64,000 bases of DNA from assembly GCF_006345805.1 (NCBI RefSeq), contig NC_043009.1, forward strand, positions 69,564,001 to 69,628,000, in the 5' to 3' direction. The notes under the pieces were generated by a model, which searched no databases, was not told the origin of the DNA, and worked only from the letters and a program-made list of their open reading frames with translations. A program made the position numbers and the translations under genes. The DNA comes from Octopus sinensis. Taxonomy: Eukaryota. Shown here piece after piece: positions 2,066 through 63,044 of the stretch (the stretch's first letter is position 1; every line of letters starts with the position of its first letter).

Positions 2066-2338
2066 CGTGATCACCGTGACCGACCAGGCTATCGCTGGTC
2101 ACAATGCGCTTCGCATTGTTTTAGCCTTCAAATGACGCCACCCCGCTGGCTAAGCGAGAAGGCAAACAGAAAAAAGAGTGAGAGAAAGTTGTGGTGAAAG
2201 AGTACAGCAGGGAACGCCACCCCCCTGCCGGAGACTCGTGGAGCTTTTTAGGTGTTTTCGCTCAATAAACACTCACAACGCCCGGTCTGGGAATCGAAAC
2301 CGCGAGTCCGCTGGCCTAACCAATGGGCCATTGCGCCT

Positions 2339-2340
<2 letters not shown>
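2061..2340 (-). mobile_element. tRNA-derived SINE, copy 1 of a tandem triplet
   Basis: Minus-strand head GGAGGCGCAATGGCCCATTGG (A box) and GGTTTCGATTCC (B box), with a CACGGTGAT repeat tail; homologous to the copy at 25534-25845. Confidence 0.85.
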
Positions 2341-2378
<38 letters not shown>

Positions 2379-2385
2379 TATATAT

Positions 2386-2674
2386 ATCACCGTGATCACC
2401 GTGATCACCGTGACCGACCAGGCTATCGCTGGTCACAATGCGCTTCGCATTGTTTTAGCCTTCAAATGACGCCACCCCGCTGGCTAAGCGAGAAGGCAAA
2501 CAGAAAAAAGAGTGAGAGAAAGTTGTGGTGAAAGAGTACAGCAGGGAACGCCACCCCCCTGCCGGAGACTCGTGGAGCTTTTTAGGTGTTTTCGCTCAAT
2601 AAACACTCACAACGCCCGGTCTGGGAATCGAAACCGCGAGTCCGCTGGCCTAACCAATGGGCCATTGCGCCTCC
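2386..2674 (-). mobile_element. tRNA-derived SINE, copy 2 of the triplet (one extra 9-bp tail unit)
   Basis: Identical by eye to copy 1 except for three rather than two ATCACCGTG units. Confidence 0.85.
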
Positions 2675-2688
2675 ATATATATATATAT

Positions 2689-2968
2689 ATCACCGTGATC
2701 ACCGTGACCGACCAGGCTATCGCTGGTCACAATGCGCTTCGCATTGTTTTAGCCTTCAAATGACGCCACCCCGCTGGCTAAGCGAGAAGGCAAACAGAAA
2801 AAAGAGTGAGAGAAAGTTGTGGTGAAAGAGTACAGCAGGGAACGCCACCCCCCTGCCGGAGACTCGTGGAGCTTTTTAGGTGTTTTCGCTCAATAAACAC
2901 TCACAACGCCCGGTCTGGGAATCGAAACCGCGAGTCCGCTGGCCTAACCAATGGGCCATTGCGCCTCC
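2689..2968 (-). mobile_element. tRNA-derived SINE, copy 3 of the triplet
   Basis: Identical by eye to copy 1. Confidence 0.85.
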
Positions 2969-3034
2969 ATATATATATATATACACACATACATACATAC
3001 ATACATACATACATACATACATACATACATACAT

Positions 3035-4030
3035 CTCAAGAAACACTCTTCTTGATGATATCCTATATATATCCCCAAAACAGCTGGGCTCTCTTATCTC
3101 AGAGAAGACCTGGATGGAAAGCACTCAGCATACAAGAAAAGGACCCTGCATGGGTATGTTATTTGGAAGCTCGAAAAAGACAGTAGAATTGGCACAAAGC
3201 GCAGCCCCACTTGAAGATAAGACCACTACATCACATCACACTTTGAAGGCTATGCTTTTGCAATCCAAGAACAGGAGATTGCCACAAAGTGCCTGGTGAG
3301 CAAGAGAGACAGTGACGTTCTTGTAATCCCGAGGTGCAACCGCATTTGTAGGCTACGTCATGTTTCTGTGGAAGACATCACGCATGTGATCAGCGGCTGT
3401 CCTAAAATGTCGTCACGATACTACTTCCCTATGCAGCACGATGTTGTTGCTAAAACAATTTACAATGCCATCCGCAAAAAAGACTGTCCTGAAATAAACT
3501 TAGAAAATCCCTTTGTTGTGGAAATACATTCATAAACATCAATTCAAAGAATATTCCCATCAAAACGTCTGTCAAATGTAAATATAACAGACCGGAGATT
3601 GTTGTTTCGGACAGAGGGGCAAATGTATGTACCATCATAGAGGTCAGCTGCCCTGTAGATATAAATATCTCTTTGAAAATCAAAGAAAAAAAGGATATCT
3701 ATGGACAACTACTTCGAAACCTCCAGCTTCTATATCCAGACTATGAATTCATATTCATACCAATAATAATTGGAGCACTAGGCTTTGTTAGGAAATGCTA
3801 AAAGGAGAATCTGGATAAACTGGGATGTTCAGAAAGAGAAATTGACCGGCTAATTCGTACATTAGAAGTTCAATCTGTGAGTGGAACAATAAAAATATGC
3901 AAGTCTTTTCTCAAATTCCAAATGTGAATTTGTCTGTGTTAACTATATTCCAAAGATGGAGCCTCGTATCTTTGTTGGAAACCGGTTCCCACCTCAGTCG
4001 AAGATTTATAATAATTAATTAAAAAAAAGA
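3035..4030 (+). mobile_element. 5'-truncated R4/Dong-clade non-LTR retrotransposon (CCHC knuckle plus restriction-like endonuclease)
   Basis: Translation gives FEGYAFAIQEQEIATK, CRLRHVSVEDITHVISGCPK (CCHC), HDVVAKTIY, KYNRPEIVV..IIEVSCP and PIIIGALG..KICKSFLKFQM* (stop at 3925-3927), followed by a short 3' UTR and A run; (CATA)n lies on both sides. Confidence 0.85.
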
Positions 4031-13624: not shown

Positions 13625-14000
13625 CACATCATCATCATCATTGTTCGACCGTAGTCGAGACAATGGAATTTACTATGTTACGCCAGACTTCACGGTCCAT
13701 CATAGCATTACGGAGGTCCTGTTGCTGGATGCCTGTATCCCTGGAAATTACATCAGGGTAGGAGAGTGTGCGCCCTCTGGTATCGCGAGTAGATGGCCTC
13801 CAGAGGAGAGGAGTAGAAATTACCTCGTTTTCAGCTCTACAACAATGTCCAGCAAACTGGACTCTTCTACCTTTCACAAGAGATGACACAGGTGGTAGTT
13901 TCCCATATATTTGTACTTTGGTTGGATGACGCTTCCACGAGAGATTTTGAGCTCTCATAAGGAGGCGAGTGTAAGTTCCATCCAACCGCCTCTCAATATG
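13625..14000 (-). mobile_element. 5'-truncated RTE LINE 3' end with an uninterrupted ORF2 C-terminus
   Basis: ERRLDGTYTRLLMRAQNLSW..RRVQFAGHCCRAENE..DREVWRNIV*, followed by a (TGA)n tail. Confidence 0.85.
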
Positions 14001-18081: not shown

Positions 18082-18482
18082 GGCGGTGAGCTGGCCGAAT
18101 CGTTAGTACGCCGGGCGAAATGCTTAGCGGTATTTCGTCTGCTGTTACGTTCTGAGGTTCAAATTCCGCCGAGGTCGACTTTGCCTTTCATCCTTTTGGG
18201 GTCGATAAATTAATTACCAGTTACGCACTGGGGTTGATATAATCGACTTAATCCGTGTGTCTGTCCTTGTTCGTCCCCTCTGTGTTTAGCCCCTTGTGGG
18301 TAGTAAAGAAATAGGTATTTCGTCTGTTTTTATGTCCTGAGTTCAAATTCTGCCGAGGTCCACTTTGCCTTTCATCCTTTCGGGCGTTGATAAATTAAGT
18401 ACCAGTTACGTACTTGGGTCGATCTAATCGACTGGCCCCTATTCCCCAAACTTTTAGGGCCTGGTGCCTAGAGTAGGAAAGA
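18082..18482 (+). mobile_element. Abundant tRNA-derived SINE (family A), one full copy plus an adjacent partial copy
   Basis: GGCGGTGAGCTGG..GTTCAAATTCC head and CCTTTCATCCTTT..GGGTCGATAAATT..TACCAG core, repeated about 10 times in the window. Confidence 0.8.
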
Positions 18483-21339: not shown

Positions 21340-21550
21340 GCCCACAGGGGGCTACACACAGAGAGGACAAACAAGGACAGACAAAGGGATTCAGTCGATT
21401 ACATCGACCCTAGTGCGTAACTGGTACTTAATTTATCGATCCCAAAAGGATGAAAGGCAAAGTCGACCTCGGCGGAATTTGAACTCAGAACGTAACGACA
21501 GACGAAATACCGCTAAGCATTTCGCCCGGCGTGCCAACGGTTCTGCCAGA
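21340..21550 (-). mobile_element. SINE family A
   Basis: Reverse complement of the 18082 copy. Confidence 0.8.
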
Positions 21551-22249: not shown

Positions 22250-22690
22250 TGGAAGTCACGTGGTTGATCGACTTGCTAAAAACAGGTTACAAAAGGTGTG
22301 GTCACGGTGTCCAGGCGGGCTTCTCAAAGAAAGCCATTGCTTCTTGTGTTGGATCAGTTCTGGGTTCATTAAACGAAAATTGCCAAGAGTAGAATAAATG
22401 GATAGAAAACTAAACATGGAGGATTAACAGGTCATCTACAACCTCTGGAGATATCAATAAGCAAACCCTTCAAGGCCTATATGCGTGAGGAACAGCAACA
22501 GGTCGGATGAAGAAGTCTATAAGAGCTCGAGTTTGTGAATGAAAAATTCTTGGGATGAAGCTTTCACTGCATCCCAAGAATTCTCAATCTTTTAAAAGTT
22601 GTGGCATTAACAATTCGCTTGATGGCACAGAAGATGACCTTTTATATGAAAAATCAGGTGTCTCTGATTGATGGCACTAGTGACACCCGA
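22250..22690 (+). mobile_element. Degenerate pogo/Tigger-like transposase fragment
   Basis: VLDQFWVH, GGLTGHLQPLEISISKPFKAYMRE and FKSCGINNSLDGTEDDLLY match pogo DDE and C-terminal motifs. Confidence 0.65.
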
Positions 22691-23146
22691 GGGTGAAGGC
22701 ATGGATGAAGAAGATAACAGCAGTAGTGAATTTGGGGAGCGTTATGATGACCGCCCTCGCAAATACTAAACAGACACAGACTTTGTGTCATTGGCCAGCT
22801 GGAGGAGATATCTTCCTGGGGCTAAAAACAACAGTAACCTAGGACCGCCACATTTAGTTGGCAAATAGATTAGAATATGATACCAATTTTTCTGAAACAA
22901 CCACTTTTTGTTTGTACGTACGCATGTATGTATGTATGTATGTATGTATGTGTGAGTGTATGTATGTATGTATGTATGTATGTATGTATGTGTGAGTGTA
23001 TATATATATGTATATATGTATGTATGTGTGTGTGTATGTATGTATGAGTGTATGTATGTATGTGTGTATGTATGTATGTGTGTATATATGTATGTATATA
23101 TGTGCGTGTGCGTATGTGAGAGAAAAAGACAAAGAGGGAGAGATAG

Positions 23147-25006: not shown

Positions 25007-25533
25007 CTCACAATTGTACATGAATGCTTACTAACATACACTCTCACTCACTCACGCATACAAACAAACACAAACTCTCTCACACACACACACATACATG
25101 TTTACGCACATACACATACATGTGAATTAAAAAAAATCTACTGGAATCAGCTTTAACGATATGAATTTCTTAATCTTGGGGGATATTTTAAGTCGAGAAA
25201 TAAAGTAACATTTAAGAAAGTATCTTGAATCGTTGGAATAGGTGTAATGAAATGGCGGCAATGGAACAGGAAAAGATGTCTTGTGAAAAGGACACCTGAA
25301 GAGTTGTAAGGTCATTATCATTCCTGGGGGTGAAATATTTATATCTTAAAAAAATTTTACTGAAAAATTAGTTATGAGAAAACTCGGTTCTATGAAATTA
25401 TAGATATTAAAATTCAGTTTGTATCTGAATACTATCCTAGGGTTTTATGTATATTTAATACACACACATATACATACATGCATACATACATACATACATA
25501 CATGCATGCAAGCACACACACACATATATATGT

Positions 25534-25845
25534 GGAGTCGCAATGGCCTAGTGGTTAGGGCAACGGACTTACGATCGTAGGATCGCGGTTTCGATTCACG
25601 GACCGGGCGTTGTGAGTGTTTATTGAGCGAAAACACCTAAAAGCCCTACGAGGCTCCGGCAGGGGGTGGTGGCGATCCCTGCTGTACTCTTTCGTCACAA
25701 CTTTCTCTCACTCTTTCTTCTGTTGGCCTGCTCGCTTAGCCTGCGAGGTGGCGTTATTTGAAGGCTAAAACAATGCGAAGCGCATTGTGACCAGCGATGT
25801 GTAGCAACATCTGCTAGCCTGGTCGGTCACGGTGATCACGGTGAT
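25534..25845 (+). mobile_element. Full-length SINE of the family triplicated at 2.06-2.97 kb
   Basis: A/B boxes and CACGGTGAT tail; retains two segments deleted in the triplet. Confidence 0.85.
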
Positions 25846-27559: not shown

Positions 27560-27790
27560 GCATAAACAATAATAGTTTTAAATTTTGGAGCAAAGCCAGC
27601 AATTTTAGAAGAGGGATAAATCGATTACATCGACCCCCCCCCACCAGTGTTAAACTGGAACTTATTTTATCGTTCCCCAAGGAATGAAAGGCAAAGTCGA
27701 CCTCGGTGGTATTTGAACTCAGAACGTAAAGTCGGGAGAAATGCCGCTAAGCAGTTTTTCCGGCAACGATGCCGTCAGCTTGCTTCCTTA
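27560..27790 (-). mobile_element. SINE family A-related copy
   Basis: Shared AAAGGCAAAGTCGACCTCGG..TTGAACTCAGAACG segment. Confidence 0.7.
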
Positions 27791-29014
27791 AAGTCTTAAA
27801 CAATGAACAAATTTAATTGGTAGCACAGTGAATAAGAAACGGGTTCTCCGAGTGCAAAAGTAGGAAACTTATGGCAAATTTGAGAGTAGATCGCTTTGTT
27901 TTTAGAGGAGCAGCATTTATTTAATTATTTTGTAAAGTTTAAAATCTAAACGGCGAATGATGTGATCTTGTCTACACGTAAACATTTGAAATCAATCGAA
28001 CTGATTTTTATTTTAAGTGTCCCTTTAGATGTATATTGAAAAAGATTAATTACAAGTGCTAATTATAGAGAGGCGCCATCCGCATGTAAACTACATTTAA
28101 AATTAACTTTTTTAATAAAGTGATGCTCAGTTCATTAAAGAAGAAAATTAGATTAAAAGCATAATTAGTCACAAGTATGCGATGAGGAAAAGAGAATATT
28201 AACTCAATGATGAGAAACATAATTATTGCTGCGGTTTAACGTGCACTCAAATTCCGCAGTACTTTTATGATTTTGTTGAAAATAATGAAGAAATACGGAG
28301 ATGTACTTGCATAGCAAGTGACCTGATCTGAGATCGTGTTTTGGAACGAAAACAATTGCAGCGTGGAAGGTGTTTACAAGCCATTTAAGAAACACACTAA
28401 AACCGTTAGATTCACTTCAACATTTTAATTTAATTTGTCAAATTATTTTCGTCGCCGTGAGACCGCGACCTGTTCACTGACAAAATTCCGTGCTGCATCT
28501 GAGAAAGTAACAGTTAGTTCATGATATATATGTACGTATGCATGAGTGCGTGTGTGTGCATGTGTATGTAGGTATGTATGTGTGTATGTATGCATGCATA
28601 TATGCATGTGCGTATGTATGTACATGTATGTGCGCATGCATGTGTGCATGCCTACACGCATGTATGTATGTATGTATGTATGTATGTATGCATGTATGCA
28701 TGCATGCATGTATGTATGTATGTACGTATGTACTTACGTATGTATGTGAGTATTTAGGAGAGTGTGTAGACGTGTCTGTGTGTGTGTGTACATGTGTATG
28801 TACATGTGAACGTATGTTTATGTACTGATATGTGTCAGTTCAAGTTGTATACATGACTGTTACTTTGTTGAAGGTTGTATATATACACACATATACATGT
28901 ATATAGACAAACACACACACATATATACGTGTATGTGTGTGTGTGCGTTTGTCCCATGAGTGCAGAAATGGTTTCACTTTTTGTACAATATTACTGGAAA
29001 CTAAAAATACTCAC

Positions 29015-29139
29015 CATCATAAACTGCCAGATATGCGTTTGACATGCATTGAGATTCTTGTGGAAAATCGGCGTACATGATTTCGAGTCGAATTACTTGG
29101 TTCTTAGACGTCGTAAGAAGCCAAGAACAAGATCGCATG
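29015..29139 (-). CDS. CUB-domain protein, exon D (middle exon of the second CUB; 125 nt, phase 2-1)
   Basis: Acceptor TTTCATTGCAG|, donor ATG|GTGAGT; encodes (S)MRSCSWLLTTSKNQVIRLEIMYADFPQESQCMSNAYLAVYD(G). Confidence 0.9.
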
Positions 29140-29464
29140 CTGCAATGAAATCGAAAGCGAAATGAATAACAGAAATCCTTTGTGAAGGGATCGACATGTA
29201 TCGAACGCTAATGAAAGATAATGGAATAACAGATTAAACGAATACACATCACACTCATGTGCTCTTTTTCACTTTGTTCCACTCTGGGTTTCTCTCTTTT
29301 AAAACCGCAAAACTTCCTGACTGTCATCTGAAATTACACTTCTTAACTATTCTGTCCATGTCAACAGATTTGTATATTTGAATGTAGTAATGATGATGAT
29401 GATGATGACGACAGAAACTATATGGATAGCCAGATGAGAAGGTGGGGATGTAAATTTTCACACA

Positions 29465-33021: not shown

Positions 33022-33228
33022 CACGCCGGACGAAATGCTTAGCGGTATTTCGTCTGCCGCCACGTTCCGAGTTCAAATTCCGCCGAGGTCGACTTTGCCT
33101 TTCACCCTTTGGGGGTCGATTAAATAAGTACCAGTTACGCACTGGGGTCGATATAATCGGCTTAATCCGTTTGTCTGTCCTTGTTTGTCCTCTCCGTGTT
33201 TAGCCCCTTGTGGGTAGTAAAGAAATAG
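33022..33228 (+). mobile_element. SINE family A
   Basis: Near-consensus copy. Confidence 0.8.
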
Positions 33229-35529: not shown

Positions 35530-35710
35530 TTTGGTACAAGGCCAGCAATTTTGGGAGAGGGCGTAAGTCGAATATATATGGACCTCAGTGTGCAACTGGT
35601 ACTTCTTTTATCGACCCCAAAATGATGAACGACATAGTCAATCTCAGCGGAATTTGAACTCAAAACGTAAGGACGGACGAAATGCCGCTAAGCATTTTGC
35701 TCCGCGTGCT
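35530..35710 (-). mobile_element. SINE family A-related copy
   Basis: Shared core and head in reverse orientation. Confidence 0.7.
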
Positions 35711-42784: not shown

Positions 42785-43015
42785 CTATTTCTTTATTGCC
42801 CACAAGGGGCTAAACACAGAGGGGACAAACAAGGACAGACAAAGGGATTAAGACGATTACATCAACCCCAGTGCGAAACTGGTACTTTTTTTATAGACCC
42901 CGAAAGGATGAAAGGCAAAGTCGACCTCGGCGGAATTTGAACTCAGAACGTAACGACAGACTAATACCGCTAAGCATTTCGTCCGGCGCGCTAACGTTTC
43001 TAACAACTCGCCGCC
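42785..43015 (-). mobile_element. SINE family A
   Basis: Near-consensus reverse copy. Confidence 0.8.
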
Positions 43016-54892: not shown

Positions 54893-55017
54893 CGTCGTAC
54901 ACAGCTATATAGTTGTCGTCACAGTTCGTTGAGTTATCTAAGGAGGAGAAAGCTACTTCAAGCTTTACGAGTTCATCGGCATTTTTGGTCGTTATCTGCC
55001 ATTCGCATTTCACAGTA
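54893..55017 (-). CDS. CUB-domain protein, exon A (middle exon of the first CUB; 125 nt, phase 2-1)
   Basis: Acceptor CTTTGTCCTTTTAG|, donor ACG|GTAAGT; encodes TVKCEWQITTKNADELVKLEVAFSSLDNSTNCDDNYIAVYD(G); same length and phases as exon D. Confidence 0.92.
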
Positions 55018-55129
55018 CTAAAAGGACAAAGGAAGTAAAAGATGGATATTGTTTTAATGTATTTATTTTATATTCTGCTTAGTGTCACTCACACACTCAC
55101 ACACGCACGCAGACAAGACAGTGAGTTGG

Positions 55130-55310
55130 CTGACAAAATGCAAAGTGGCGTTTCTCCCGGCTTTACGTTCTGAGTTCATCTACAACCGACGTCGACTTTC
55201 CCTTTCATTTTTCGGGGTCGAGGAAAGAAGTACCAGATGAAACCTGGGGCCTATGTAATTGGCTAGTCCACTACTTCTAATTTTCAGGGCCTGTGCCTAT
55301 TGTAGAAAAG
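55130..55310 (+). mobile_element. SINE family A-related diverged copy
   Basis: Shared GTCGACTTT.CCTTTCAT..GGGGTCGA core. Confidence 0.65.
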
Positions 55311-55334
55311 ATAAATATATATATATATATATAT

Positions 55335-55730
55335 ACGTGACGTATTTTTGCCATTTCAATATGGCTAACCCCTAAGGGTGGATGCTACTGTAGTTTTTAG
55401 CCCCAGGAGGACACACTCCTCGTGCTGGCCATAGACACACTTTCTGTGTCCTGTCAGTATTTGCAAAGGGAAGTCATCCTTCCCGTCTTCAACTTATGAT
55501 ACACACGGACTCGAGTTTCGAGGTATTGACCTCTCGTCAGCGTGTGACAATCATAGTTGTCGCCGAGAATTAGAATTCCTTCACAAATACTTATACTTTT
55601 TCCAGCGTCCACTGTCGCTGATATTGAAAAAGTGAAATCAAACAATGATAAATATCAATGTGAGTTATATACAGTAGCGGTAACACAACGTGACGTATTT
55701 TTGCCATTTCAATATGGCTAACCCCTAAGG
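55335..55730 (-). mobile_element. Retrozyme-like element: 353-bp monomer plus 43-bp terminal direct repeat, inside (TA)n
   Basis: ACGTGACGTATTTTTGCCATTTCAATATGGCTAACCCCTAAGG is identical at 55335-55377 and 55688-55730; the element contains a canonical HHR and has no credible coding capacity. Confidence 0.8.
55490..55559 (-). ncRNA. Type I hammerhead ribozyme
   Basis: CAACT-ATGAT-tgt-CACACG-CTGACGA-GAGGT(CAAT)ACCTC-GAAAC-TCGA-GTC-CGTGTG-t-ATCAT-a-AGTTG: complete core, GUC triplet, and all three stems pair. Predicted cut between 55508 and 55507. Confidence 0.92.
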
Positions 55731-55856
55731 TATATATATATATATACCAATAATAACAAAGGCTAAAATTAATTAATTAACTAGTAATCAATAATTTTAC
55801 CAAGTAGAATTCGGCATGAAAAGGGACTATTTCTCGGTAAACTTAAACAATATTTT

Positions 55857-56021
55857 ATAATTAGGGTTCAGCAAGATTTTCTTTACCACATATCGAAGTT
55901 TAGAAATAGCAGCCAAAGAACCTTAGCTCTTCTTAAAGTAGAAGAAATAGCTAAGGTTCTTTGGCTGCTATTTCTAAACTTCGGTATGTGGTAAAGCAAA
56001 TCTTTGCTGAACCCTAATTAT
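55857..56021. repeat. Palindrome with arms of about 72 bp at the end of a (TA)n-flanked element (about 55747-56021)
   Basis: ATAATTAGGGTTCAGC..CCTTAGCT mirrored by AGCTAAGG..GCTGAACCCTAATTAT. Confidence 0.85.
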
Positions 56022-56030
56022 GATATATAT

Positions 56031-58959: not shown

Positions 58960-59165
58960 GCAGAGAGTTTGCAGAATCGTTAGTCAGACAAAATGCTTAG
59001 CGGCGTTTATTCCGTCTCTTTACGTTCGGATTCTAAATTCCACCCAGGTCATCTTTGCCTTTTATCCTTCCAGGGTTCATTAAATAAATACCAGTTGGAC
59101 ACTGAGGTCGATCTACATGACTTAACCCCTCCCTTAAAATTGCCAGCCTTGGGCAAACATTTAAA
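58960..59165 (+). mobile_element. SINE family A-related diverged copy
   Basis: GCAGAATCGTTAG..AATGCTTAGCGG head and core. Confidence 0.65.
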
Positions 59166-61169: not shown

Positions 61170-61580
61170 ATCAGGTCATCCCATAAGTTCTGTCCGAATT
61201 TTGAATAAAGAAAACAAGTGATCAAATGTTAAGAGTACACGTGCCTGTGGAGTGCTCAGCCACTTCCACGTTAATTTTACGAGCAGACTGTTCCGTTGAT
61301 GGGATCAACTGGAACCCTCGTCGTCGTAACCGACGGAATGCCACCAATCATCAATGTACTTTCCCTGATTATCTATGACTTCCTTCCATCTATTTACAAG
61401 CTTTTTAATCCGTCAATGTAAAACTCTTGGTTTCAAAGCGAAGAACTCTGAAATGTCAATTTCGATCTCCTGGCTTGCGAAAGTTATGTCCCCCAAATAA
61501 TTCTGTAAACTACGAAACAAATGGTAATCTGAAGGAGCAAGGTCGAGAGAATAAGGTGGACAATGCATGGTGACCACAAT
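61170..61580 (-). mobile_element. Mariner 3' remnant interrupted by a SINE fragment
   Basis: HCPPYSLDLAPSDYHLFRSLQNYL matches the YSPDLAPxD motif. Confidence 0.8.
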
Positions 61581-61949
61581 TGAGAATAGTAGTCCAGATG
61601 TCCGAGTACAAATGTTCTCCATAGAACTAGTATAGTTTCCTGGTCCCTTGTTCAGACGGTTCTCAGAATCAGTCTGGTCCTTCACCTGCACACTGTCGCC
61701 ATCTTAGCGATGTACACATGAAACGAGGCATCGTTGCTCATATCAATCCTTAGATCACACGTTGTATGTGACTCTAGGATTGACGCTCCTTTTGGTCCAC
61801 AGTATCGTTGTTGCGGCTTCTGGGCACCAATTAGCTGGTAGCGGAGGGCTTGGAATTTGCCTGCATTAAATTACATATTGTTTTCCTCAGCCCATTTATA
61901 TATAGCATCTAGGTTTTTCTGTAAAAGATTATCATCAAAAGGTTCCTTG

Positions 61950-62720
61950 AATGCTTGTACTACTTTTTTGTCGTCGGCAGGGCTAGTTAAAGTGTGGCTG
62001 TCTGCATAACTGATGGCATATCTCAAAGAGCCATCAGGAACAACAGCGGCTCAATACAGTTTCCTGAGGCACTCCACTTTCTATTACTGTCTCCTTGGAA
62101 AGGGCTCTATTGGCTGCCAGACCCCGGCTTCTGTCTTTTAAGACGTCATGCAACTAATCTCCAAGTTTCACAGTTATGTCGACTCTCTGTAGCTTGTGAC
62201 ATATTATCCCATGATCAACCTTATCAAAGGACTTTGCTAAATTGAGATATATCACGTCCACGTTTGAGCGATTCGTTAATTGTAAGGTAGCTTCTTCCTG
62301 AGCGGAAGCTATGCTGGGTGTCGGGGAGCAAGTCATTATCTTAAAGGAACACAACCAGTCTCTTCCTGACAATGCTTTCCTTGACATTGCTGACATGGGT
62401 CGTGAAAGAGACAGGTCTATAATTTTTAACATCTACACTGCAAACTCCCTTATGGATAGAACGTATTATGCCTTCCTCTAACTTTTTGGAAAGTCTCCCA
62501 GTTGCGAGGAAGCTTTGGAAGAGAATCTAAAGTGGTCCTGCTAGAGTCCCTTTGCATTTCTTTAAGAGGGTTGCTGGGAATCCATCAGGGCCTGCGGCTG
62601 ATTTTGAGCTCACTTCATCAATGGCTGATGTTACACCTGTTTTCTCTATTTCAATGCTATCAATAACTGCCATTTTTTTTCCTGTACAAAGACGAACCCA
62701 TAAAAGAAACACAACACCAT
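61950..62720 (-). mobile_element. CR1/Jockey-like LINE reverse-transcriptase fragment
   Basis: SAAGPDGFPATLLKKC, NVDVIYLNLAKSFDKVDHGI and SGVPQETVL; contains stops and frameshifts. Confidence 0.8.
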
Positions 62721-63044
62721 TTCTAGCAACACACAATCCGCATCACCAAAACATTTTTAACATCATCAAAACAAATTTGCCACTCATAAAACAAAGGGAA
62801 AAATAAAAAAAAAAAGCTAATCAAACCCTGACTCTCATTGCATCTTCACAGTAGATGCTGAAGCAAATGGCTGAGATAAGACAACCTTAATTGTCATAAA
62901 ACTATTCTGTGTTCTTTCACCCTGGCGGTTGCATGTTATTTGTAGAAATTACAAATTACAGTGTAACGACTTTATCATTTACACCGATTCTTTTCATGGT
63001 AAGTCACAACGAAGTGAACGTATTTTTGCAGCTTATCAAGGCTT

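What the first reader, a model, noticed from the sequence alone, without database searches (positions are those of the whole stretch)
55335..55730. Retrozyme-like element with a canonical hammerhead ribozyme, sense inside a CUB-gene intron
Seen: a 353-bp unit followed by an exact 43-bp repeat of its start, embedded in (TA)n. The minus strand holds a complete type I HHR (55490-55559) with CUGACGA and GAAA core, GUC triplet, 5-bp stem II with a CAAU loop, palindromic stem III (ACUCGAGU), and a stem I of about 16 bp with an internal loop 6 bp from the core. The rest of the monomer has further hairpins (GACACA/TGTGTC, GGAG/CTCC, GGAAG/CTTCC). Established: metazoan non-LTR retrozymes (Schistosoma Sm-alpha, newt satellite 2, coral and mussel repeats) are 150-400 nt type I HHR units that produce circular RNAs, and stem I internal loop to loop II contacts accelerate cleavage. 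Inference: monomer plus short redundancy is what reverse transcription slightly more than once around a 353-nt circle would leave, so this may be a cephalopod circRNA-based retrozyme family. It lies on the pre-mRNA strand about 320 bp (HHR about 470 bp) upstream of the exon A acceptor and could cut that intron.
Basis: partly seen in the sequence, partly recalled or inferred. Interest (0 to 1): 0.92.

Follow-up and report, generated by a model that had tools for sequence, protein, structure and literature searches.

The report
Hammerhead-ribozyme mini-retroelement inside a gene intron
A 396-bp mobile-element insertion carrying a complete self-cleaving hammerhead ribozyme sits in a (TA)n microsatellite within an intron of a CUB-domain gene; it is a genuine but expected new member of the animal "retrozyme"/Penelope-dependent element class, not a new kind of system.

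Summary
An exact 43-bp direct repeat at 353-bp spacing (55335-55377 = 55688-55730) bounds a 396-bp insert. Its two flanks join into one uninterrupted (TA)~18 tract. The minus strand carries a complete type I hammerhead (55559-55490, cut after C55508). Rfam Hammerhead_1 gives a full-length match of 32.2 bits, just under the gathering score of 34. My own structure-aware descriptor finds 1 site in the window and 0 in 300 shuffles. The 353-nt unit folds far better than shuffles (z = -6.2).

A second, old, 5'-truncated copy (22731-22867) keeps the 3' part, including the hairpin of the 43-bp segment. The 43-mer is therefore element sequence, not a target-site duplication, and the family has a fixed 3' end.

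Size, GC content, helix III design (2 bp plus a palindromic tetraloop, as in the mussel retrozyme), the (TA)n target, 5' truncation and a ~40-bp terminal extension all match published animal non-LTR retrozymes and non-autonomous Penelope-like derivatives. The redundancy needs a template longer than one unit, but a circle, a multimer, an inherited R-U-R structure and a collapsed array cannot be told apart here.

Sense intronic position is confirmed. The cephalopod origin, copy number, self-cleavage and circular RNA could not be tested. Verdict: new member of a known kind, moderate interest.

The parts
55335..55730 (-). Whole insertion: 396 bp, made of one 353-bp unit plus 43 bp of the next unit (1.12 units). 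The sense strand, which carries the ribozyme, is the minus strand. Sense position p = 55730 - coordinate + 1.
   Evidence: Direct repeat D2. The flanks join into one (TA)n tract. nhmmer self-match.
55688..55730 (-). 5' copy of the 43-nt terminal segment (sense positions 1-43).
   Evidence: 100% identical to 55335-55377.
55335..55377 (-). 3' copy of the 43-nt segment (sense 354-396), the 'tail' or partial second unit. It contains the hairpin GCCAU-AUUGAA-AUGGC (plus-strand 55350-55365) followed by AAAAAUACGUCACGU at the 3' end. I infer this is the site where reverse transcription starts.
   Evidence: The hairpin is conserved in copy 2 (15/19 identities, p = 0.022, colinear with the strong upstream match).
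55490..55559 (-). Type I hammerhead ribozyme with extended stem I (16 bp, with an internal loop 6 bp from the core). The Rfam core match covers 55502-55546.
55507..55508 (-). Predicted self-cleavage site: 3' of C17 (55508), leaving a new 5' end at 55507 (sense 223/224).
   Evidence: Position of GUC relative to the core, read from the sequence and the Rfam alignment. Cleavage itself was not tested.
55315..55334 (.). Left half of the (TA)n target microsatellite.
55731..55746 (.). Right half of the (TA)n target microsatellite.
22731..22867 (+). Second, older copy of the family. It is 5'-truncated, covers sense positions 238-386, is about 76-78% identical, and has no ribozyme. Its envelope is 22711-22885.
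   Evidence: blastn, nhmmer E = 5e-13, alignment. No hammerhead hit there.
54893..55017 (-). Host exon A, encoding an internal part of a CUB domain. The AG acceptor is at 55019-55018 and the GT donor at 54892-54891. The element's 3' end is 318 bp upstream of the acceptor, on the same strand.
   Evidence: Pfam PF00431 23.2 bits, above the 21.4 cut-off, profile positions 25-65. Splice signals read. A second CUB exon on the same strand lies at about 29010-29140.

Best explanation
This is a single, fairly young insertion of a short non-coding retroelement of the animal 'non-LTR retrozyme' type. It is a 353-nt, highly self-paired RNA unit with one canonical type I hammerhead, most likely mobilised in trans by a Penelope-like element (PLE) reverse transcriptase/GIY-YIG endonuclease.

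Proposed mechanism, with each step marked:
1. The family's RNA exists in a form longer than one unit, either a multimeric transcript or a ligated circle. This is inferred from the 1.12-unit insert, whose ends are not at the ribozyme cut site.
2. The endonuclease nicks a (TA)n microsatellite. The target is shown. The enzyme is inferred.
3. Reverse transcription starts at a fixed internal site next to a small hairpin, about 173 nt downstream of the ribozyme cut site. The fixed 3' end is supported by two copies. The start site itself is inferred.
4. Synthesis runs 396 nt towards the 5' end, once past the unit boundary. This leaves a unit plus a 43-bp extension, the same kind of partial tandem or 'tail' that PLE insertions show.
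5. Copy 2 is what 5' truncation gives. Alternatively it is a copy of a ribozyme-cleaved linear monomer.

At this locus the element is a passenger in an intron, transcribed in sense with the host pre-mRNA. With only one ribozyme, this locus cannot by itself release a unit-length RNA or a circle. The ribozyme could cleave the intron RNA between 55508 and 55507.
For: Ribozyme: a full-length Rfam Hammerhead_1 match with all core nucleotides. A structure-aware descriptor finds 1 site in the window against 0 in 300 shuffles.

Unit properties: 353 nt, GC 42.5%, circular MFE -115.3 against -81.7+-5.4 kcal/mol for shuffles, z = -6.2. These match the published retrozyme ranges: 170-400 nt, GC below 45%, stable self-paired circles, and ~350-390 bp units in mussel (PMC7229834).

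Helix III is 2 bp plus a palindromic tetraloop, the design described for invertebrate retrozyme hammerheads. The mussel construct has ACGCGCGU in the same place.

Insertion: the flanks rejoin into one (TA)~18 tract, while (TA)n covers only 2.6% of the window.

PLE signature from the literature: (TA)n or AT-rich targets, frequent 5' truncation, partial tandems, a 30-40 bp tail caused by two internal reverse-transcription start sites, and non-autonomous derivatives that form pLTRs (PMC8557442; PMC11167929). Animal retrozymes are phylogenetically nested with PLE pLTRs (bioRxiv 10.64898/2026.07.22.740005).

Second copy: it is 5'-truncated, keeps the 3' part through at least 33 nt of the 43-mer, and sits at an unrelated site.
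Against: No autonomous PLE, and no PLE sequence similar to this element, could be found or searched for in the source genome, so the partner is inferred from the literature alone.

The hammerhead is of the 'canonical' type rather than the minimal type found in most animal PLE pLTRs (PMC4209133).

The redundancy is 43 bp, slightly above the published 30-40 bp tail.

Only two copies are available, one of them decayed, so a fixed 3' end and the family's copy number are weakly supported.

The Rfam score is below the gathering threshold.

No sequence similarity exists to the mussel or coral retrozymes or to any public collection searched.

Tandem organisation, which defines retrozymes, is absent here.

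Self-cleavage, transcription and circular RNA are all untested.
Confidence: 0.65

Rival explanations
1. The insert is the direct cDNA of a covalently closed 353-nt circular RNA, copied 1.12 times around. The family would therefore spread through circles made by ribozyme cleavage and ligation.
For: The insert is longer than one unit, and its ends are not at the ribozyme cut site, so the template was intact across 55508/55507. The unit folds as a very stable circle. Circles are the dominant retrozyme RNA in coral, mussel and axolotl, and are the proposed templates (PMC7229834). This rival is compatible with PLE mobilisation and differs from the best explanation only in the form of the template.
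Against: An uncleaved multimeric transcript gives an identical product. For the one PLE studied in vitro, unprocessed RNA was the dominant substrate, and ribozyme mutants did not affect insertion (PMC11167929). One locus cannot show permuted start points or multi-turn products.
Confidence: 0.25
2. Assembly collapse. The real locus is a tandem array of n + 0.12 units, a classical retrozyme array, and the assembler reduced it to its shortest representation of 1.12 units.
For: 1.12 units is exactly the minimal path through a collapsed tandem repeat. The two 43-mers are 100% identical. Retrozymes normally occur as dimers to long multimers (PMC7229834).
Against: Nothing in the sequence itself points to collapse. 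Monomeric copies are common in vertebrate retrozyme families (proportion 0-1). The other copy in the window is also single. Read depth is not available.
Confidence: 0.1
3. A linear SINE-like element with built-in 43-nt terminal direct repeats (R-U-R). It would be transcribed from its own promoter and mobilised by a LINE, like Schistosoma Sm-alpha, with the hammerhead carried as cargo.
For: The element is short, non-coding and dispersed. The window is full of SINE and LINE fragments. Both copies share the 3' region, as SINEs do.
Against: No tRNA-like region was found. No A or B box was found within 2 mismatches, and a T5 run at sense position 100 would stop RNA polymerase III. There is no poly(A) or LINE-type 3' repeat. 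No target-site duplication is visible. The element has no similarity to the LINE fragments in the window.
Confidence: 0.08
4. The 43-bp repeats are a long target-site duplication around a 310-bp insert, or they arose by local duplication after insertion.
For: Direct repeats flank a unique core. PLE target-site duplications are variable in length.
Against: Copy 2, at an unrelated locus, contains the 43-mer's hairpin contiguous with the 3' part of the unit. The repeats abut the two halves of one (TA)n tract exactly. That fit is expected for an insert's own ends and not for a later duplication.
Confidence: 0.02

Closest known systems
Metazoan non-LTR retrozymes (Cervera & de la Pena 2020, PMC7229834), especially the ~350-390-nt units of the mussel Mytilus galloprovincialis
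   Same: A canonical type I hammerhead with a 6-bp proximal helix I, a short helix II, and a helix III of 2 bp plus a palindromic tetraloop. Unit length of 353 nt. GC below 45%. A strongly self-paired predicted circle. Non-coding and dispersed in an animal genome.
   Different: This locus has one unit plus 43 bp rather than a tandem array, so there is a single ribozyme. There is no sequence similarity outside the ribozyme design. Expression and circularity are unknown.
Penelope-like elements and their non-autonomous derivatives: pLTR, 30-40 bp 'tail', (TA)n targeting in the Neptune, Hydra and Naiad clades (PMC8557442, PMC11167929, PMC4209133)
   Same: Insertion into (TA)n. A partial-tandem or tail-type terminal redundancy of about 40 bp. 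5' truncation of copies. A hammerhead upstream of the inferred reverse-transcription start. A small hairpin at the 3' end.
   Different: No RT/GIY-YIG ORF is present. No demonstrated homology to any PLE pLTR. The hammerhead is the canonical type, not the minimal helix-III-less variant of most animal PLEs. Canonical hammerheads are, however, reported for the Hydra clade, which also occurs in molluscs.
Schistosoma Sm-alpha SINE-like hammerhead repeats (my own knowledge; cited within PMC4209133 and PMC7229834)
   Same: A unit of about 335-350 nt with a type I hammerhead, dispersed as well as clustered.
   Different: Sm-alpha is described as tRNA-related with RNA polymerase III boxes. No A or B boxes and no tRNA-like region were found here.
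Newt satellite 2 and axolotl retrozymes (330-353 nt)
   Same: Same size class. Type I hammerhead with a palindromic helix III.
   Different: The amphibian ribozymes have a weaker helix III or helix II and need dimers for cleavage. They form huge tandem arrays.
Plant LTR retrozymes (PMC4918200)
   Same: Non-autonomous, hammerhead-bearing, and spread through a circular RNA intermediate.
   Different: The plant elements have type III hammerheads inside ~350-bp LTRs, a primer-binding site and polypurine tract, 600-1000-nt units, GC above 55%, and are mobilised by Gypsy elements. None of these applies here.

Membership tests
Hammerhead ribozyme, type I (Rfam RF00163) | Conserved catalytic core: C3 U4 G5 A6 N7 G8 A9, G12 A13 A14, the A15.1-U16.1 pair, and H17 | tested here: met
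   CUGACGA at 55540-55534, GAAA at 55519-55516, U16.1 at 55509, C17 at 55508.
Hammerhead ribozyme, type I (Rfam RF00163) | Three helices around the core, with helix I open-ended (type I topology) | tested here: met
   Helix I is 6 bp and extends to 16 bp. Helix II is 5 bp with loop CAAU. Helix III is 2 bp plus the UCGA loop. The descriptor finds 1 site against 0 in 300 shuffles.
Hammerhead ribozyme, type I (Rfam RF00163) | Covariance-model score at or above Rfam's gathering score (34 bits) | tested here: not met
   32.2 bits with all 45 model positions matched, E = 4.6e-6 on 701 bp. The hit is not listed in either whole-window scan. It is a narrow miss; the core and all helices are intact.
Hammerhead ribozyme, type I (Rfam RF00163) | Site-specific self-cleavage | not testable with these tools
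   Needs in vitro transcription of monomer and dimer constructs.
Metazoan non-LTR retrozyme | Canonical type I hammerhead inside a short (about 170-400 bp), low-GC (below 45%) non-coding unit | tested here: met
   353 bp, GC 42.5%, only short chance ORFs.
Metazoan non-LTR retrozyme | Head-to-tail tandem organisation (dimer or more), so that two ribozymes flank a unit | tested here: not met
   Only 1.12 units and one ribozyme are present at this locus. Monomeric offspring copies are reported for known families. Array collapse cannot be excluded.
Metazoan non-LTR retrozyme | Unit RNA predicted to adopt a stable, highly self-paired structure | tested here: met
   Circular MFE -115.3 kcal/mol, z = -6.2, 0 of 200 shuffles as stable.
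Metazoan non-LTR retrozyme | [quoted passage not shown] | not testable with these tools
   No transcriptome data for the source organism could be reached.
Metazoan non-LTR retrozyme | Multi-copy family in the genome | tested here: inconclusive
   Two copies in 64 kb. The genome itself could not be searched.
Penelope-like element (autonomous) | ORF encoding a telomerase-like RT plus a GIY-YIG endonuclease | tested here: not met
   The 396-bp insert has no ORF longer than 63 aa, and its six-frame translation has no homologues.
Non-autonomous PLE derivative | PLE insertion signature: AT-rich or (TA)n target, partial tandem or a 30-40 bp tail, and 5' truncation | tested here: met
   The (TA)n target is restored when the flanks are joined, and (TA)n covers 2.6% of the window. 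The terminal extension is 43 bp. Copy 2 is 5'-truncated. The tail is 3 bp longer than the published range.
Non-autonomous PLE derivative | Sequence similarity of its 3' end or pLTR to an autonomous PLE of the same genome | not testable with these tools
   The source genome is unavailable. No similar sequence exists elsewhere in the window apart from copy 2. The coding remnant beside copy 2 is a pogo-like DDE_1 transposase, not an RT.
Sm-alpha-type or tRNA-derived SINE | Internal RNA polymerase III promoter (A and B boxes) or a tRNA-like head, and a LINE-type 3' tail | tested here: not met
   ARAGORN found nothing. No A or B box within 2 mismatches, and a T5 run lies inside the unit. There is no poly(A).

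The most novel reading that the evidence does not exclude
The two copies may be direct genomic footprints of how retrozyme RNA is reverse-transcribed. Both end at the same internal start site, about 173 nt downstream of the ribozyme cut. One copy (396 nt) was made from a template that was continuous across the cut site, so it was ligated or multimeric. The other begins within about 15 nt of the cut site, as expected for a ribozyme-cleaved linear monomer primed internally. Together with the (TA)n target and the ~40-bp tail, this would be insertion-level evidence that a PLE enzyme mobilises canonical-hammerhead retrozymes, in a mollusc or cephalopod lineage where such a family has not been described. 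It would also be evidence that the ribozyme cleaves in vivo.
Probability: 0.25. Interest if true: 0.6.

Novelty: new member of a known kind. Interest (0 to 1): 0.4.

Why it matters
Which enzyme mobilises animal retrozymes is still argued mostly from co-occurrence and phylogeny. A young single insertion with clean ends gives a concrete test: it has a (TA)n target, a fixed 3' end, a ~40-bp extension and a template longer than one unit. If this anatomy holds across the family, it points to PLE-type internal initiation on multimeric or circular RNA.

The locus is also a natural case of a probably active hammerhead transcribed in sense within a pre-mRNA intron, 490 nt upstream of an acceptor. That allows a test of whether such passengers affect host splicing, and whether introns are a disfavoured location, as reported for Xenopus.

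Otherwise it adds one more family to an already well-populated class.

Tried and rejected
1. Other copies through the protein database: a six-frame translation of the unit gave no hit.
2. Host protein and orthologous loci for an empty-site test: the CUB exons gave no hit. Exact look-ups of two window ORFs were not on record.
3. More DNA from the same genome through transposon proteins: RTE-type LINE relatives at 82-86% aa identity exist in ENA metagenomes (Tara Oceans and one other sample). Their contigs hold only the LINE and no copy of the element. The sample identifiers are not in the literature library.
4. DNA pattern scans. The family-specific 22-mer gave 0 hits in viral, JGI metagenome and GTDB genome collections. 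A hammerhead pattern with the same helix III gave 0 viral hits. It gave 17 metagenome contigs from other hosts that are unrelated outside the ribozyme and belong to a longer (at least 1 kb) permuted repeat. It also gave 2 prokaryotic hits that look like chance matches.
5. Homology to the published mussel Mg353 and coral Amil224 retrozymes: none.
6. Further decayed copies in the window, using single-sequence and two-sequence nhmmer profiles: none beyond copy 2.
7. The idea that the (TA)n is the tail of the adjacent SINE: rejected. Another copy of that SINE reaches the same end without a (TA)n run.
8. The idea that the coding remnant beside copy 2 is the autonomous partner: rejected. It is a weak DDE_1 pogo-like match.
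9. My initial expectation that the short helix III makes the lone ribozyme inactive: withdrawn. The retrozyme paper reports that invertebrate hammerheads of this design cleave efficiently as monomers.
10. A pooled-ORF Pfam scan of the whole window for PLE RT/EN: prepared but not run. The unit has no other similarity in the window, so the result could not change the conclusion.

Full report
OBSERVATION. The feature is in the sequence exactly as described. A 43-bp exact direct repeat (55335-55377 and 55688-55730, spacing 353) cannot be extended on either side. It is bounded by (TA)n runs at 55315-55335 and 55731-55746. Read on the minus strand, positions 55559-55490 form a type I hammerhead:
- Proximal stem I is CACACG/CGUGUG.
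- The core is CUGACGA (55540-55534).
- Helix II is GAGGU-CAAU-ACCUC.
- GAAA is at 55519-55516.
- Helix III is A-U and C-G closing a UCGA loop, which gives the palindrome ACUCGAGU.
- C17 is at 55508, so the predicted cut is 55508|55507.
- Stem I continues beyond a UGU/U internal loop to 16 bp.

Rfam's Hammerhead_1 model aligns over all 45 positions at 32.2 bits (E = 4.6e-6 for the 701 bases searched). This is 1.8 bits under the gathering score, so the default whole-window scan is empty. The permissive whole-window scan also fails to list the hit. Because the bit score does not depend on search size, I attribute that to the speed filters. I therefore made an independent test. A descriptor requiring the core plus helices I, II and III finds this one site in the window and none in 300 dinucleotide-preserving shuffles searched on both strands. 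The core-only pattern is expected 0.06 times per window. The 91-nt ribozyme region folds with z = -3.5.

THE UNIT. I permuted the 353-nt unit at the cut site and folded it as a circle. Its energy is -115.3 kcal/mol against -81.7 +- 5.4 for shuffles (z = -6.2, 0 of 200 as stable). GC is 42.5% against 37% for the window. No other Rfam family matches the unit. There is no tRNA-like region, no RNA polymerase III A or B box within two mismatches, and a T5 run lies inside the unit. The longest ORF is 63 aa, and the six-frame translation has no homologue among 5.8 billion proteins.

IT IS AN INSERTION, AND THE 43-MER BELONGS TO IT. Joining the flanks restores a single uninterrupted (TA)~18 tract. (TA)n runs of six or more units cover only 2.6% of the window, so landing inside one is unlikely by chance for a random insertion.

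The window holds a second family member at 22731-22867 on the plus strand. It matches sense positions 238-386 of the 396-nt element (nhmmer E = 5e-13, about 76-78% identity). It lacks the ribozyme. It lies directly after a decayed pogo-like DDE_1 transposase remnant, which therefore cannot be its partner.

This copy is 5'-truncated but runs through the unit boundary into the 43-mer. The 43-mer's hairpin (GCCAnAUU...UGGCAAA) is recognisable there, with 15/19 identities (p = 0.022 on its own, and colinear with the strong upstream match). Three conclusions follow:
- The 43-mer is element sequence, not a target-site duplication.
- The family has a defined 3' end and variable 5' ends, as retroelements do.
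- With two copies in 64 kb, the family is probably not rare.

The 5' limit of copy 2 (sense about 218-238) falls within about 15 nt of the ribozyme cut site (sense 223/224). This is suggestive only, at roughly 1 chance in 12 for a random truncation point.

WHAT THE REDUNDANCY MEANS. The insert is 1.12 units long, and its ends are not at the cut site. Its template was therefore continuous across 55508|55507 and longer than one unit. So does an uncleaved multimeric transcript. So does a master copy that already had the unit-plus-43 structure. So does an assembly that collapsed a longer array to its minimal representation. One locus cannot separate these.

The literature provides a close precedent. 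PLE insertions are typically 5'-truncated partial tandems, and they often carry a 30-40 bp 'tail' at one end (PMC8557442). For a purified PLE enzyme, the tail corresponds to two internal reverse-transcription start sites in a stem-loop downstream of the hammerhead. Unprocessed RNA was the main substrate for that enzyme (PMC11167929). Several PLE clades, including the hammerhead-bearing Hydra clade that occurs in molluscs, insert preferentially into (TA)n. Non-autonomous derivatives that form pLTRs are known. A 2026 preprint shows that vertebrate retrozyme families are sister to PLE pLTRs, and that monomeric copies are common.

COMPARISON WITH KNOWN RETROZYMES. Cervera and de la Pena describe animal retrozymes as 170-400-nt, low-GC, self-paired units with canonical type I hammerheads. 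Units are about 350-390 nt in mussel. Invertebrate ribozymes have a 2-bp helix III capped by a tetraloop and cleave efficiently as monomers, at about 0.8 per min in coral and about 0.1 per min in mussel. The mussel construct in their supplement has ACGCGCGU where this element has ACUCGAGU. So the ribozyme here is of the retrozyme type, not the minimal helix-III-less type of most animal PLE pLTRs, and activity as a lone monomer is plausible. There is no sequence similarity to the mussel or coral units.

The defining tandem arrangement is absent here. With a single ribozyme, this locus cannot itself release a unit-length RNA or a circle.

HOST CONTEXT. On the minus strand, an exon at 55017-54893 has a polypyrimidine tract and an AG acceptor, plus a GT donor. 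It encodes CUB profile positions 25-65 (23.2 bits, above Pfam's cut-off). A second CUB exon lies at about 29.1 kb on the same strand. Because exon A starts mid-domain, an upstream exon must exist. The 318 bp between the element and the acceptor is a SINE-like repeat, not an exon.

Whether cleavage occurs, and whether it matters for splicing, is untested. From my own knowledge, intronic ribozyme cleavage can be tolerated through exon tethering or can be harmful when fast. In Xenopus, retrozymes are under-represented in introns.

WHAT COULD NOT BE DONE. The source genome and its relatives were out of reach. Specifically:
- No protein hit for the CUB exons.
- No record of window ORFs.
- No match to a family-specific 22-mer in any DNA collection.
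- The closest LINE relatives come from marine or host-associated metagenome contigs that hold only the LINE.

'Cephalopod' therefore remains unverified. Copy number, arrays, permutation and the autonomous partner are open. The literature library holds no paper that links retrozymes with cephalopods. One giant-squid genome paper counts 235 Rfam Hammerhead_1 loci without analysing them.

VERDICT. This is a real, canonical hammerhead in a real mobile-element insertion. It is best read as a monomeric copy, with a PLE-type tail, of a retrozyme or non-autonomous PLE family. It is a new member of a known kind. The insertion anatomy is a useful lead on how such elements are copied, but it needs the genome-wide survey to carry weight.

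Noticed in passing
window 55850-56028: A foldback, MITE-like palindrome of about 180 bp. It has 59-nt arms that are 95% complementary, plus outer arms, and lies 120 bp from the hammerhead element. It abuts another (TA)n. Its outer end GCTGAACCCTAATTATGA(TA)n resembles the hammerhead element's end GCTAACCCCTAAGG(TA)n (74% over 39 nt). It also draws a spurious sub-threshold MIR6024 hit.
   Followed up: no
window 22711-22731 (5' limit of copy 2) compared with 55507/55508: The truncated second copy begins within about 15 nt of the position equivalent to the ribozyme cut site. This is what a cDNA of a ribozyme-cleaved linear monomer would look like. At 76-78% identity, the boundary cannot be resolved more finely.
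   Followed up: partly
window 55688-55730 (sense 5' end CCTTAGGGGTTAGCC): The 43-mer starts with a TTAGGG-like motif (TTAGGGGTTAG). Endonuclease-deficient PLEs carry telomere-repeat stretches next to their hammerheads. A single hexamer like this one is within chance expectation.
   Followed up: no
window 22400-22725 (+): A decayed, frameshifted pogo/Tigger-like transposase C-terminus (Pfam DDE_1, 17.9 bits, E = 0.0023, below the cut-off) lies directly upstream of copy 2.
   Followed up: yes
window 55125-55310, with about 8 other copies (e.g. 27644-27767, 42856-42953, 21398-21522, 33029-33162, 18329-18482, 35575-35699, 58987-59115): A SINE-like repeat family at 68-79% identity. One copy fills the space between the hammerhead element and exon A.
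   Followed up: partly
window 2154-3183, and 25448-25707 (-): Three tandem copies of another SINE-like unit, visible as the repeated artefactual ORF ARRQTEKRVRESCGERVQQGTPPP..., each followed by a microsatellite.
   Followed up: no
L001-L017 (JGI metagenome contigs, mostly Ga0126336): A dispersed repeat of at least 1 kb from another eukaryotic host carries a type I hammerhead with the identical ACUCGAGU helix III. It shows two classes of 5' boundary and permuted junctions, a PLE-like partial-tandem arrangement. L001 has two identical hammerheads 662 nt apart.
   Followed up: partly
window 13627-13996 (-), compared with L020 and L021: The window's RTE-type LINE fragment is 83% and 78% identical in DNA to contigs from an ENA metagenome (ERZ23489410) and a Tara Oceans assembly. 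Relatives of this host's transposons are therefore present in marine metagenomes.
   Followed up: partly
whole window: The permissive Rfam scan returns over 100 sub-threshold 'microRNA' hits (mir-297, mir-466, mir-3149 and others). All lie on TA/CA/TATG microsatellites and are low-complexity artefacts. The same scan silently misses the genuine 32-bit hammerhead.
   Followed up: yes
window 61416-61703 (-) and 61870-62750 (-): A mariner-like transposase C-terminus (..HCPPYSLDLAPSDYHLF..) lies next to LINE reverse-transcriptase fragments. Pfam gave no significant hit for the short pieces tested.
   Followed up: no
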